Virus record (IMG/VR): IMGVR_UViG_3300027899_000001
Coordinates: 310,001 to 374,000 of that record
Reading direction: 5' to 3' (one strand)
DNA: 64,000 bases
The notes under the pieces are model-generated. The model worked only from the letters and a program-made list of their open reading frames with translations. It searched no databases and was not told the DNA's origin. Position numbers and translations under genes: made by a program. Positions 29,326 to 51,570 of this stretch are shown in pieces. Each line of letters begins with the position of its first letter. Position 1 is the first letter of the stretch.

Positions 29326-29583
29326 CTGAGAAAAATTAGGAAGCGTGTTTTTATAAGTTGTCTCTTATGCTCTAACCTACTTATCAATCTGTCCTGTACG
29401 TGATTAAAAGACGCCTAAGACACCGCACCTTCGGGAATTACGGCCCTTTCGGGAAAATTGATGTTCAGAATCAAGAGCGCTGTCATAGTTTGAATTTATC
29501 TAGGTTGCCGAAATCCATCAGCTGGGTTTTAACTATGTTGCCATAGAAAAAAGGTTTCGAAGTACCGCTTGACCTTACTACAG
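29326..29583 (-). ncRNA. Long Y-like RNA (258 nt) with unknown multibranch insert
   Basis: CTGTAGTAAGG..TACTTCGAAACC 5' motif, TTCTCAG 3' motif, several GNRA-capped hairpins. Confidence 0.65.
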
Positions 29584-29600
29584 ATGTTGTTTAAAATATA

Positions 29601-29826
29601 ACTGAGAATTGTTGTTTTGTGCGTTTTAAGGAATTATCTTTCCGAAAATCGTTGCGGTGATTTTCAATACCGTGCTGTGTTGTGTAGGCCGAAGCCGCAA
29701 ACCTTGAGCGTTATTTAACTGATTTAATTGGCATTGCTGCCGATCAATAGTATGACTCTTTCGAGCCAGAAGTTGCCGAGGCAACGTTTTGTTGGTTTCG
29801 AAGTATCACAAAAACTTCACTACAGT
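29601..29826 (-). ncRNA. Long Y-like RNA (226 nt) with tetraloop-rich insert
   Basis: ACTGTAGTGAAG..TACTTCGAAACC; GGCTC-GAAA-GAGTC, GGCA-GCAA-TGCC, GGC-TTCG-GCC; TTCTCAGT. Confidence 0.65.
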
Positions 29827-29942
29827 TTTATTATTAAAAATTTTAAAGAACTTTTATATACTATATATGGATTTAAAAAGTATTAGTTTTATAACTTAAT
29901 GCATTTATTTCATTAATATATAAAATAAAAGTAGTAAGTTTT

Positions 29943-51020: not shown

Positions 51021-51045
51021 TAGCTTTTAACTTTTCCCCCATTTG

Positions 51046-51128
51046 AGACCGAGAAGGGATTCGAACCCTTGTGAGCTTTCGCTAATGGTTTTGCAGACCA
51101 TCCTTTTCAACCACTCAAGCACTCAGTC
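51046..51128 (-). tRNA. trnC-GCA: tRNA-Cys(GCA) with long variable arm
   Basis: ATGGT-CTGCAAA-ACCAT, AGC-GAAA-GCT arm, U73. Confidence 0.85.
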
Positions 51129-51307
51129 AAATTTTATTCCAATATTTCAAATAACTTATAATGCAAATATAATACTAATTTCTGAATTAAAAAAATATTT
51201 TTGCATTTATTTTCTATTTTTTTTACTTATCTTAAAAATTGTATACAAATATAAACAATAATCTTGATATAAAAAAATAATTTAACACTTATTTTAAAGA
51301 ACTATAT

Positions 51308-51339
51308 AAACAAAGAACCCTCCGTATTTTGGAGGGTTC
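51308..51339 (-). terminator. Intrinsic terminator (attenuator of tRNA array 3)
   Basis: GAACCCTCC-AAAATAC-GGAGGGTTC-TTTGTTT. Confidence 0.85.
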
Positions 51340-51367
51340 AGAAAGGAGTATATAATAAATGATATTA

Positions 51368-51478
51368 TTACCTACGCTTAACTATTCCCTCCGTTTTAAC
51401 AAAATAACATAACGGTAGCTGCTCGCTAACTTGTGGGAGTTGTTGTGAAAAAGAAGAATATGTAGGTTTCAATATCAT
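51368..51478 (-). promoter_or_regulatory. Leader peptide MILKPTYSSFSQQLPQVSEQLPLCYFVKTEGIVKRR (attenuator 3)
   Basis: 36-codon ORF upstream of terminator; Q/L/P/E/C/Y/F run. Confidence 0.75.
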
Positions 51479-51570
51479 CACTTAATATTTCTTAATTTTA
51501 ATATATATCAATGTATATTTGTAAATTATATATACTGAATGCAAAAAGTTTTAAAAAAATGAAAAATAAT

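What the first reader, a model, noticed from the sequence alone, without database searches (positions are those of the whole stretch)
51308..51478. Attenuator 3: Gln/Leu/Pro/Cys/Tyr/Phe leader with one codon for each Leu anticodon
Seen: QQLPQVSEQLPLCYF has 13 of 15 residues from the array-3 set. The four Leu codons TTG, CTC, CTA and TTA correspond to the four Leu anticodons CAA, AAG, TAG and TAA, and CAA and CAG to both Gln tRNAs. ACGGAGGG in the leader duplicates the terminator 3' arm and can pair with its 5' arm CCCTCC, or with ACTCC as a competing helix.
Basis: partly seen in the sequence, partly recalled or inferred. Interest (0 to 1): 0.88.

Follow-up and report, generated by a model that had tools for sequence, protein, structure and literature searches.

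The report
Codon-sampling leader before phage tRNA array
A giant phage carries, just ahead of a block of tRNA genes, a tiny conserved reading frame that uses one codon for almost every tRNA in that block and is followed by a switchable transcription stop signal, which looks like a sensor that could tune the phage's tRNA production to demand.

Summary
On the minus strand an ATG ORF (51478-51368) contains QQLPQVSEQLPLCYF. ACGGAGGG occurs only twice in 64 kb, once in the ORF and once as the 3' arm of a hairpin-plus-T terminator (51339-51315).

It is not chance. Over all six frames of the window, this ORF holds the shortest stretch covering the seven amino acids of the downstream tRNA array, and the shortest covering ten of its eleven anticodon classes. 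Two other short ORF-terminator units, ahead of the Thr/Ser array and the Lys...Gly array, rank first for their own arrays. Four homologues from other phage contigs keep the ORF, the frame-specific enrichment, the GGAGGG segment and the terminator.

The leader-peptide attenuator reading is largely supported in silico, with corrections:
- The 8-nt duplicate is specific to this window; the conserved core is GGAGGG against CCCUC[U/C].
It is 18 bp, pairs the start-codon region with the sequence after the stop, and has four compensatory pairs.
- Conserved promoter-like motifs lie between the terminator and tRNA-Cys, so the attenuator is probably not the only gate.

No experiment was possible. I rate it a new variant of a known mechanism, of high interest.

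The parts
51525..51554 (-). Promoter-like motif of class B (AAACTTT-N-TATATAA) that would start the leader transcript
   Evidence: The motif occurs 7 times in the window against 0.29 expected. It precedes all three leader ORFs and also ordinary genes. A sigma-70-like match lies at 51554-51525. It is conserved in the four homologues. Promoter function is inferred.
51368..51478 (-). Leader ORF of 36 codons plus stop
   Evidence: The ATG is at the same alignment column in all five sequences, and the frame stays open in all five despite an in-frame CAA deletion in three of them.
51462..51479 (-). P1 5' arm; it contains the ATG
   Evidence: RNAalifold pairs alignment columns 32-49 with 136-153. Compensatory changes occur at 4 pairs. 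In register 80 of 90 cells are canonical pairs, against 28-40 of 90 when one arm is slid by 1-3 columns. Duplex energy is -16.6 to -19.3 kcal/mol.
51404..51446 (-). Control-codon core: CAA CAA CTC CCA CAA GTT AGC GAG CAG CTA CCG TTA TGT TAT (the window's Phe codon TTT follows at 51403-51401)
   Evidence: Mean pairwise identity is 0.91 over five homologues. It is the rank-1 covering stretch at both amino-acid and codon level. It uses codons that are rare in this phage: CTC 1.2%, CTA 5.5%, CCG 4.1%, GAG 4.8% of their families.
51412..51419 (-). Segment 1 (GCUACCGU), which can pair with segment 2 when no ribosome is present
   Evidence: Part of the RNAalifold consensus (columns 92-99 with 117-125). 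Duplex energy is -5.9 to -9.8 kcal/mol. The segment is almost invariant, so there is no covariation evidence.
51387..51394 (-). Segment 2 (ACGGAGGG; conserved core GGAGGG at 51392-51387), the proposed antiterminator strand
   Evidence: Identity is 1.0 over five homologues while both flanks are 0.41-0.50. The first G is a codon third position whose codon changes among ACG, GCG and ATG. It pairs with the terminator 5' arm over 6-8 bp.
51358..51375 (-). P1 3' arm; it overlaps or follows the stop codon
51340..51357 (-). Nearly invariant linker (...UUAUUAUAUACUCCUUUC); role unknown
   Evidence: Identity is 0.96 over five homologues. A 22-nt stretch spanning the last bases of the P1 3' arm and this linker is identical in all five.
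51303..51339 (-). Intrinsic terminator: 5' arm with CCCUCC at 51336-51331, 3' arm with GGAGGG at 51323-51318, then a T-rich tail
   Evidence: In register 49 of 50 cells are paired. One compensatory pair: C-G in the window, U-A in the relatives. Hairpin energy is -15 to -16.6 kcal/mol.
51243..51286 (-). Class A promoter-like motif directly after the terminator
   Evidence: Orthologous motifs follow the terminator in L008, L014, L017 and L020. In L008 and L014 an ORF follows the motif.
51162..51214 (-). Second class A promoter-like motif, about 35 nt upstream of tRNA-Cys
   Evidence: The 21-nt core is identical at four sites in the window, with a fifth site differing at 2 positions. All five are on the minus strand, intergenic, and 15-35 nt before a start codon or a tRNA.
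51045..51128 (-). tRNA-Cys, first gene of the array (Cys, Gln, Phe, Leu x3, Pro, Tyr, Glu, Leu x2, CTA suppressor, Met, Gln, extending down to 41539)

Best explanation
The element is a ribosome-mediated (leader-peptide) transcription attenuator at the head of a phage tRNA array.

Proposed mechanism:
- A short transcript starts at a class B promoter-like motif and carries a 32-36-codon ORF. The core of that ORF presents roughly one codon for each anticodon species encoded downstream, many of them rare in this phage.
- If the matching charged tRNAs are plentiful, the ribosome runs to the stop and covers GGAGGG and the P1 3' arm. The terminator hairpin then forms and transcription ends at about 51315.
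- If any of those tRNAs is scarce, the ribosome stalls in the core. GGAGGG stays free and pairs with the terminator 5' arm (CCCUCC, or CCCUCU in relatives) as that arm emerges. Polymerase then reads on into tRNA-Cys and the array. This would be negative feedback on the phage's own tRNA supply.
- Without a ribosome, the 18-bp helix P1 sequesters the ATG and encloses GGAGGG, which pairs with GCUACCGU. This favours termination and silences released transcripts.

What is shown: the sequence features, their conservation, the covariation and the codon-anticodon match. What is inferred: translation, stalling, read-through and the role of P1.
For: Codon-to-array match:
- The shortest stretch in six frames of 64 kb that covers the array's 7 amino acids lies in this ORF (8 residues).
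- So does the shortest stretch covering 10 of its 11 anticodon classes (13 codons against 19 for the next best).
- L014 covers all 11 of its own Watson-Crick classes in 13 codons (next best 41). L008 covers its 9 classes in 11 codons (next best 20).
- Enrichment is specific to the reading frame and exceeds dinucleotide shuffles.

Replication at the other arrays:
- The two other arrays have their own short ORF plus terminator, each ranked first for its own anticodon classes.
- A selection-aware permutation test over all three gave 2 of 3000 permutations at or above the observed score.

Switch geometry:
- GGAGGG is invariant between variable flanks.
- The segment 2:segment 3 duplex is -10.5 to -16 kcal/mol, against -15 to -16.6 for the terminator.
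- Constrained folds give 6-7 antiterminator pairs in 14 of 15 stalled-ribosome cases across the five homologues (4 pairs in the other case) and none with a ribosome at the stop.
- The three leader terminators each have an unusually strong upstream complement to their 5' arm (p = 0.007, <0.003, 0.03). Three ordinary terminators do not (p = 0.37, 0.94, 0.44).

Selection on the RNA:
- There are four compensatory pairs in P1 and one in the terminator.
- The element is 86% identical between the window and L008, while the tRNA-Cys genes downstream of it are only 64-70% identical in a forced global alignment.
Against: - Conserved class A promoter-like motifs lie between the terminator and tRNA-Cys in the window. 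One follows the terminator directly in all five homologues. In L008 and L014 an ORF with its own motif is inserted there. The array can therefore be transcribed without passing the terminator.
- The antiterminator would close a loop of about 51 nt. In full-length folds the terminator always wins, as it also does in trp.
- In ribosome-free folds truncated before the terminator 3' arm, the antiterminator already forms in 4 of 5 sequences. The no-translation state is therefore not cleanly 'off' unless P1 traps it kinetically.
- The segment 2:segment 3 pairing shows compatibility (G-C versus G-U) but no clean double compensatory change.
- Thr and Ser codons, which belong to another array, also occur in the leader.
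- By whole-ORF amino-acid count the window's copy is not exceptional.
- No homologues were found for leaders 1 and 2.
- There are no expression data and the host is unknown.
Confidence: 0.55

Rival explanations
1. The element is an autonomous small transcription unit. The ORF is translated and does sample the array's codons, but its output is not read-through into the array. The translation state might control the stability or activity of the ~200-nt RNA, whose conserved single-stranded ACUCCUUUC linker could act on other targets. Alternatively it might modulate the adjacent downstream promoter by transcriptional interference. On this view the terminator mainly insulates the next unit.
For: The unit has its own promoter-like motif upstream and a terminator followed immediately by another promoter-like motif in all five homologues. 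The 22-nt stretch spanning the end of P1 and the linker is invariant and has no role in the attenuator model. What follows the terminator differs between relatives: nothing, a 63-aa ORF, or an endonuclease-like ORF.
Against: It does not explain why GGAGGG is kept complementary to the terminator 5' arm, or why only the three leader terminators have such a complement. At array 2 the terminator lies about 40 nt before the first tRNA with no recognisable promoter motif between them.
Confidence: 0.2
2. The element is a structured non-coding small RNA closed by helix P1, comparable in setting to the stable RNAs encoded in the T4 tRNA cluster. The ORF and its codon content are incidental.
For: It is a G+C island (0.40 against 0.13 in the flanks). 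P1 shows covariation. It has its own terminator. GGAGGG is conserved at the nucleotide rather than the amino-acid level. The ATG is buried in P1.
Against: Frame-specific enrichment occurs in all five homologues. The frame stays open with an in-frame indel. Codon coverage of each lineage's own array ranks first. Two unrelated sequences at the other arrays show the same property. No Rfam family reaches its threshold.
Confidence: 0.1
3. The element is an ordinary gene for a small protein, and the peptide itself is the functional product.
For: The ORF is conserved in five sequences. In the core, most substitutions are synonymous: AGC/AGT, TTA/TTG, TTC/TTT and GGA/GGC/GGT.
Against: The N-terminal and C-terminal parts change freely in both sequence and length, while the RNA helix that they encode is maintained by compensatory changes. 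The amino acid next to GGAGGG changes while its third-position G is kept. There is no Pfam or PHROG match. The match to the array would have to be coincidence.
Confidence: 0.07
4. It is a chance resemblance: a normal terminator at the end of the upstream gene cluster plus a random short ORF.
For: Short ORFs are abundant (225 on this strand). Several out-of-frame ORFs show similar whole-ORF enrichment.
Against: The covering-window ranks, the permutation test, the conservation and the covariation all argue against it.
Confidence: 0.03

Closest known systems
Multivalent leader-peptide attenuators of enterobacterial amino-acid operons (thr, ilvGMEDA, ilvBN; also trp, his, leu, pheA)
   Same: A short leader ORF rich in control codons is followed by an intrinsic terminator whose 5' arm can pair instead with an upstream segment. 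Several amino acids are sensed by one leader. The terminator is thermodynamically stronger than the antiterminator.
   Different: The regulated genes here would be tRNA genes of a phage, not biosynthetic enzymes. The leader holds about one codon per anticodon species for 7 amino acids, rather than runs of one or two amino acids. A long-range helix encloses the whole ORF and the ATG. Promoter-like motifs follow the terminator. There is no sequence or covariance-model similarity: the best Rfam leader hit reaches 25 bits against a threshold of 55 and covers only the terminator.
pheST operon attenuator (pheM leader) of E. coli
   Same: Leader-peptide attenuation applied to a component of the translation machinery, responding to the supply of charged tRNA.
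   Different: That system senses one amino acid and controls an aminoacyl-tRNA synthetase. This one would control the tRNAs themselves and so close a direct feedback loop.
T-box riboswitches
   Same: A terminator/antiterminator decision upstream of translation-related genes that reads out the tRNA state.
   Different: T-box RNAs bind uncharged tRNA directly through a specifier codon and the T-box sequence, without a ribosome. No T-box model matches this element. Here many codons sit in an open frame with a conserved ATG.
Stable small RNAs encoded in the phage T4 tRNA gene cluster (recalled from memory, not tested)
   Same: Structured small RNAs encoded next to phage tRNA genes.
   Different: Those are processed from the tRNA precursor and, as far as I recall, have no associated ORF or terminator switch. 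No sequence comparison was made.

Membership tests
Leader-peptide (ribosome-mediated) transcription attenuator | Short ORF with a start codon in the leader transcript | tested here: met
   The ATG is at the same alignment column and the frame is open in 5 of 5 homologues. Actual translation could not be tested.
Leader-peptide (ribosome-mediated) transcription attenuator | Control codons that correspond to the product being regulated | tested here: met
   Covering windows for the downstream anticodon classes rank first in the window, in L014 and in L008. The enrichment is frame-specific.
Leader-peptide (ribosome-mediated) transcription attenuator | Intrinsic terminator downstream of the leader ORF | tested here: met
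   A 9-10 bp G+C-rich hairpin plus T tract. It is conserved, with one compensatory pair.
Leader-peptide (ribosome-mediated) transcription attenuator | Antiterminator that uses the terminator 5' arm and whose formation depends on ribosome position | tested here: met
   In silico only. GGAGGG pairs with CCCUC[C/U] at -10.5 to -16 kcal/mol. The pairing is present in folds with a stalled-ribosome mask and absent with a mask at the stop codon. The upstream complement is significant for the leader terminators only.
Leader-peptide (ribosome-mediated) transcription attenuator | Pairing that holds the antiterminator strand when the leader is not translated (the 1:2 helix) | tested here: inconclusive
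   GCUACCGU:ACGGAGGGC is weak and invariant. P1 is strongly supported by covariation and would exclude the antiterminator topologically. However, truncated ribosome-free folds still prefer the antiterminator in 4 of 5 sequences.
Leader-peptide (ribosome-mediated) transcription attenuator | Regulated genes are transcribed through the terminator, with no independent promoter between them | tested here: inconclusive
   Two promoter-like motifs lie between the terminator and tRNA-Cys, and one is conserved in all homologues. Promoter activity is inferred, not shown. At array 2 no such motif intervenes.
Leader-peptide (ribosome-mediated) transcription attenuator | Read-through rises when the cognate charged tRNA is limiting | not testable with these tools
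   This needs expression experiments.
Curated Rfam leader families (Phe_leader, Thr_leader, His_leader, Leu_leader, Trp_leader) | Covariance-model score at or above the family's gathering threshold | tested here: not met
   The best hit is Phe_leader at 25.1 bits against a threshold of 55, and it lies over the terminator only. Nothing appeared in the wider scans.
T-box riboswitch | Match to the T-box model (Stem I specifier loop and T-box sequence) | tested here: not met
   No hit at E <= 10 in the 271-nt scan, and none in the 16-kb scan.
Type I toxin mRNA with 5'-3' pairing | Small hydrophobic membrane peptide | tested here: not met
   Read directly from the peptides: they are polar and aromatic (for example ...SQLPQFSEQLPLCYEENTEGQS) with no hydrophobic stretch.

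The most novel reading that the evidence does not exclude
This giant phage splits its ~40 tRNA genes into three arrays with non-overlapping amino-acid sets. Each array is headed by a short 'codon-sampler' leader ORF with a terminator/antiterminator switch. Ribosome speed on one codon per encoded anticodon would then set how much of that array is transcribed. This would be a direct homeostatic loop for virus-supplied tRNAs. It could also act as a tripwire that boosts phage tRNA output when host tRNAs are depleted or cut by anticodon-nuclease defences.
Probability: 0.45. Interest if true: 0.92.

Novelty: new variant of a known kind. Interest (0 to 1): 0.85.

Why it matters
How phages control the large tRNA sets that many of them carry is essentially unknown. 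Those genes are usually treated as constitutive codon-usage patches.

A leader peptide that samples each codon served by the downstream array would be the first described case of tRNA genes regulated by attenuation on their own products. I make that claim only as far as three full-text searches and my own knowledge reach.

It would give a simple, testable logic for why the tRNA genes are grouped as they are. It would also link phage tRNA arrays to sensing of translational stress or of tRNA-targeting host defences.

The shortest-covering-window statistic used here could be applied to any virus or plasmid that carries tRNA arrays.

Tried and rejected
- GenBank phages (blastn, distant mode, 4 kb around the element): only tRNA-sized hits.
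- Pfam and PHROGs on the leader peptide: nothing.
- Exact-sequence look-ups of the L017 and L020 peptides: not on record.
- Searches for homologues of leaders 1 and 2 found only the same phage. I tried a neighbouring protein and a back-translated peptide pattern.
- The array-1 terminator as a search pattern hit 24 contigs. Apart from the window's own phage they share only the generic terminator.
- The 20-nt linker pattern gave one chance hit inside a coding region, L016.
- The genome-contig scan found no bacterial copy, so it gave no host clue.
- I considered that the plus-strand AAGGAG plus ATG opposite the linker might be a real gene. I rejected this because the plus-strand ORF is cut short in L008 and this phage shows almost no Shine-Dalgarno use: 2 of 56 ORFs have an SD-like 4-mer upstream.
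- I did not run the count of structure pairs, to avoid typing a long structure string. The in-register and slid-register counts were computed in a script instead.

Full report
SETTING

The window is part of a 405-kb phage contig (IMGVR_UViG_3300027899_000001). Overall G+C is 29%. Nearly all genes lie on the minus strand. ARAGORN finds 39 tRNA genes, and Rfam adds one more at 20208-20134, whose anticodon loop reads TCT. SD-like 4-mers precede only 2 of 56 long ORFs, so the phage does not appear to use Shine-Dalgarno sequences. Homing-endonuclease-like ORFs are scattered among the tRNAs.

In transcription order the tRNAs fall into three groups whose amino-acid sets barely overlap (tRNA-CAT/Met occurs in two of them):
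- 51128-41539: Cys, Gln, Phe, Leu, Pro, Tyr, Glu, plus a CTA suppressor and Met.
- 26160-16319: Lys, Gly, Asp, Trp, Ala, Asn, Val, Met, His, Arg.
- 12688-11301: Thr, Ser.

THE OBSERVATION

On the minus strand an ORF runs from ATG 51478 to TAA 51368 and contains QQLPQVSEQLPLCYF. The stated Leu and Gln codons are present. The 13-of-15 count is correct only when Glu is included. ACGGAGGG occurs only at 51394-51387 and 51325-51318 in the whole window. The second copy is the 3' arm of a 9-bp hairpin followed by a T tract, at 51339-51315. The region is a G+C island: about 0.40 against 0.13 in the flanks.

IS IT MORE THAN CHANCE?

Whole-ORF amino-acid enrichment in the window's copy is modest. It is p = 0.015, and several out-of-frame ORFs do as well. 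Sharper tests are decisive:
- Dinucleotide shuffles of the ORF reach the observed in-set count in 44 of 5000 trials. The other two frames show no enrichment.
- Across all six frames of the 64 kb, the shortest stretch holding all seven array amino acids is EQLPLCYF, inside this ORF.
- The shortest stretch covering 10 of the 11 anticodon classes is 13 codons of this ORF; the next best needs 19. With the eleventh class (TTG, which sits at codon 3) the ORF ranks second.

The pattern repeats at the other two arrays.
- Ahead of the Thr/Ser array lies MKAINNISISITSSTTGTE (13471-13412), followed by a terminator at 13387-13366. Its codons TCG, TCA, AGT, ACC, ACA and ACG match all six anticodons of that array. 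It is the rank-1 covering window. The chance of such coverage given the phage's codon usage is 0.008.
- Ahead of the Lys...Gly array lies MIRMAKHMVNNWNANDNGIRGK... (26361-26254), followed by a terminator at about 26232-26203, which is about 40 nt before tRNA-Lys. It is the rank-1 window for 12 anticodon classes, at 19 codons against 24 for the next best. AAG and AGG, the cognates of Lys-CTT and Arg-CCT, are missing from it.
- A permutation test picks the best short ORF in the 1 kb upstream of each array under random partitions of the amino acids. It reaches the observed score in 2 of 3000 trials. With the true sets it picks exactly these three ORFs.

A caveat applies: I chose the anticodon class definitions after seeing the data.

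RELATIVES

Pattern scans found four homologues on other contigs: L008 (also held as L015 and L018), L014, L017 and L020. None turned up in GenBank phages or in bacterial genomes. L008 and L014 extend far enough to show the element upstream of tRNA-Cys and an array restricted to the same seven amino acids.

All five sequences keep the ATG at the same alignment column and an open frame of 32-36 codons. Three of them carry an in-frame loss of one CAA. In-set residues number 20-22 of 31-32 in the relatives, reached by 0-4 of 5000 shuffles.

Scored against their own arrays:
- L014 covers all 11 Watson-Crick codon classes in 13 codons (next best 41).
- L008 covers its 9 classes in 11 codons (next best 20).
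- L014's lineage-specific codons TTG, GAA and CCG correspond to its Leu-CAA, Glu-TTC and Pro-CGG genes. This is suggestive only, because the arrays are truncated by the ends of the loci.

The element is 86% identical between the window and L008. The upstream gene is 71% identical, and the tRNA-Cys genes are only 64-70% identical in a forced global alignment.

RNA ANATOMY

Mean pairwise identity by segment:

| Segment | Identity |
|---|---|
| Core codons | 0.91 |
| GGAGGG | 1.0 |
| Loops either side of GGAGGG | 0.41-0.50 |
| Linker after P1 | 0.96 |
| Terminator | 0.87 |

RNAalifold finds an 18-bp long-range helix, P1. It pairs 51479-51462, which includes the ATG, with 51375-51358, which lies at or just after the stop. 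Four pairs show compensatory double changes, and the terminator shows one more. In register 80 of 90 cells pair, against 28-40 of 90 when one arm is slid.

GGAGGG is conserved at the nucleotide level. Its first G is the third base of a codon that reads ACG, GCG or ATG in different sequences. The base after GGAGGG is a free Gly third position.

The relatives' terminator arms are CCCUCUG/CAGAGGG. The 8-nt duplicate is therefore specific to the window, but GGAGGG still pairs with the 5' arm over 6-8 bp (-10.5 to -16 kcal/mol). For comparison, the terminator is -15 to -16.6 kcal/mol and GCUACCGU:ACGGAGGG is -6 to -10 kcal/mol.

I ran constrained folds of transcripts ending just after the terminator 5' arm:
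- With a 28-nt ribosome footprint masking the control codons, the antiterminator forms with 6-7 pairs in 14 of the 15 cases across the five sequences (4 pairs in the remaining case).
- With the footprint at the stop codon, it does not form.
- Full-length folds always give the terminator, as is also true of trp.

Only the three leader terminators have a significantly strong upstream complement to their 5' arm (p = 0.007, <0.003, 0.03). Three ordinary terminators do not (p = 0.37, 0.94, 0.44).

WHAT DOES NOT FIT

A roughly 50-nt motif occurs five times in the window. Its 21-nt core is identical at four sites and differs at 2 positions at the fifth. Every copy is on the minus strand, intergenic, and 15-35 nt before a start codon or a tRNA. 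One copy, at 51214-51162, lies between the terminator and tRNA-Cys.

A related motif follows the terminator directly in all five homologues. In L008 and L014 that motif is followed by an inserted ORF. If these motifs are promoters, which is an inference, the array can be transcribed without passing the terminator. The attenuator would then add conditional transcription from the upstream class B motif, which occurs 7 times in the window. At array 2 no such motif intervenes.

Two further points remain open:
- The antiterminator would close a loop of about 51 nt.
- Ribosome-free truncated folds already favour the antiterminator in 4 of 5 sequences. The off state without translation therefore depends on P1 forming first, which is a kinetic argument I could not test.

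The invariant ACUCCUUUC linker has no assigned role.

COMPARISON WITH KNOWN SYSTEMS

The architecture works like the multivalent leader-peptide attenuators of the thr and ilv operons, and like the pheST attenuator. It is not a sequence member of any curated leader family or of the T-box family. Three full-text literature searches found no description of attenuation controlling phage tRNA arrays.

VERDICT

The attenuator interpretation is the best available explanation, at a confidence of about 0.55, with the corrections above. The main open issue is whether read-through actually feeds the array. I classify it as a new variant of a known mechanism, of high interest.

Noticed in passing
window 13471-13366 (- strand): A second codon-sampler unit. 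The ORF MKAINNISISITSSTTGTE uses TCG, TCA, AGT, ACC, ACA and ACG, which match all six anticodons of the downstream Thr/Ser array. After its stop lies GCUCUC, complementary to the 5' arm of the terminator at 13387-13366. A class A promoter-like motif and a 54-aa hydrophobic ORF lie between the terminator and the array.
   Followed up: partly
window 26361-26203 (- strand): A third unit. The first 22 residues of MIRMAKHMVNNWNANDNGIRGK... include all 10 amino acids of the Lys...Gly array, with only two outsiders (both Ile). CGCCCGC inside the ORF duplicates the terminator 3' arm. The terminator ends about 40 nt before tRNA-Lys, with no promoter motif between them.
   Followed up: partly
window 13330-13310, 15682-15662, 26602-26582, 33718-33698, 51198-51178 (- strand): A promoter-like motif of about 50 nt ending in TTATATTT[A/G]CA. 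The 21-nt core is identical at four sites and differs at 2 positions at the fifth. Each copy lies 15-35 nt before a start codon or a tRNA. The 3' end resembles the Bacteroidota -7 box TAnnTTTG; that resemblance is from memory and was not tested.
   Followed up: partly
window 13504, 26411, 42599, 43884, 44985, 51551 (- strand) and 39780 (+ strand): A second promoter-like class, AAACTTT-N5-20-TATATAA, occurs 7 times against 0.29 expected. Six of the seven copies lie in the tRNA regions.
   Followed up: partly
window about 13100-12690 (- strand): About 400 nt of G+C-rich sequence (0.5-0.56) between the small hydrophobic ORF and the first called tRNA-Thr. It has no ORF and no ARAGORN or Rfam call, yet contains T-arm-like GGTTCAAATCC and GGTTCGACCCC stretches. 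These may be unusual or interrupted tRNA genes, or another RNA.
   Followed up: no
window 20208-20134 (- strand): A tRNA found by Rfam (36.8 bits) but missed by ARAGORN. The anticodon loop reads CTTCTAA, so the anticodon is TCT (Arg, codon AGA). AGA is one of the codons in leader 2.
   Followed up: partly
window 43999-43926 (- strand); L008 5107-5109: A tRNA with a CTA anticodon (amber suppressor, labelled Pyl by ARAGORN) lies inside array 3. The leader ORF of the relative L008 ends in TAG. If that TAG were suppressed, the ribosome would run on through the terminator.
   Followed up: no
window 50921-50256, 49366-48563, 42257-41601 (- strand); L014 about 8225-7600 (- strand): Endonuclease-like ORFs (Zn-finger, HNH or DUF559 types) sit between tRNA genes at different positions in related phages. 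This suggests mobile insertions within the arrays.
   Followed up: partly
window about 29355-29830: A G+C-rich stretch of about 0.5 kb with no long minus-strand ORF and no Rfam hit, next to a strong terminator at 29318-29285. Its nature is unknown.
   Followed up: no
window 51128-51045, compared with L008 5559-5630 and L014 7598-7518: The tRNA-Cys genes of the three related phages are only 64-70% identical in a forced global alignment, much less than the leader element upstream of them (80-86%).
   Followed up: partly
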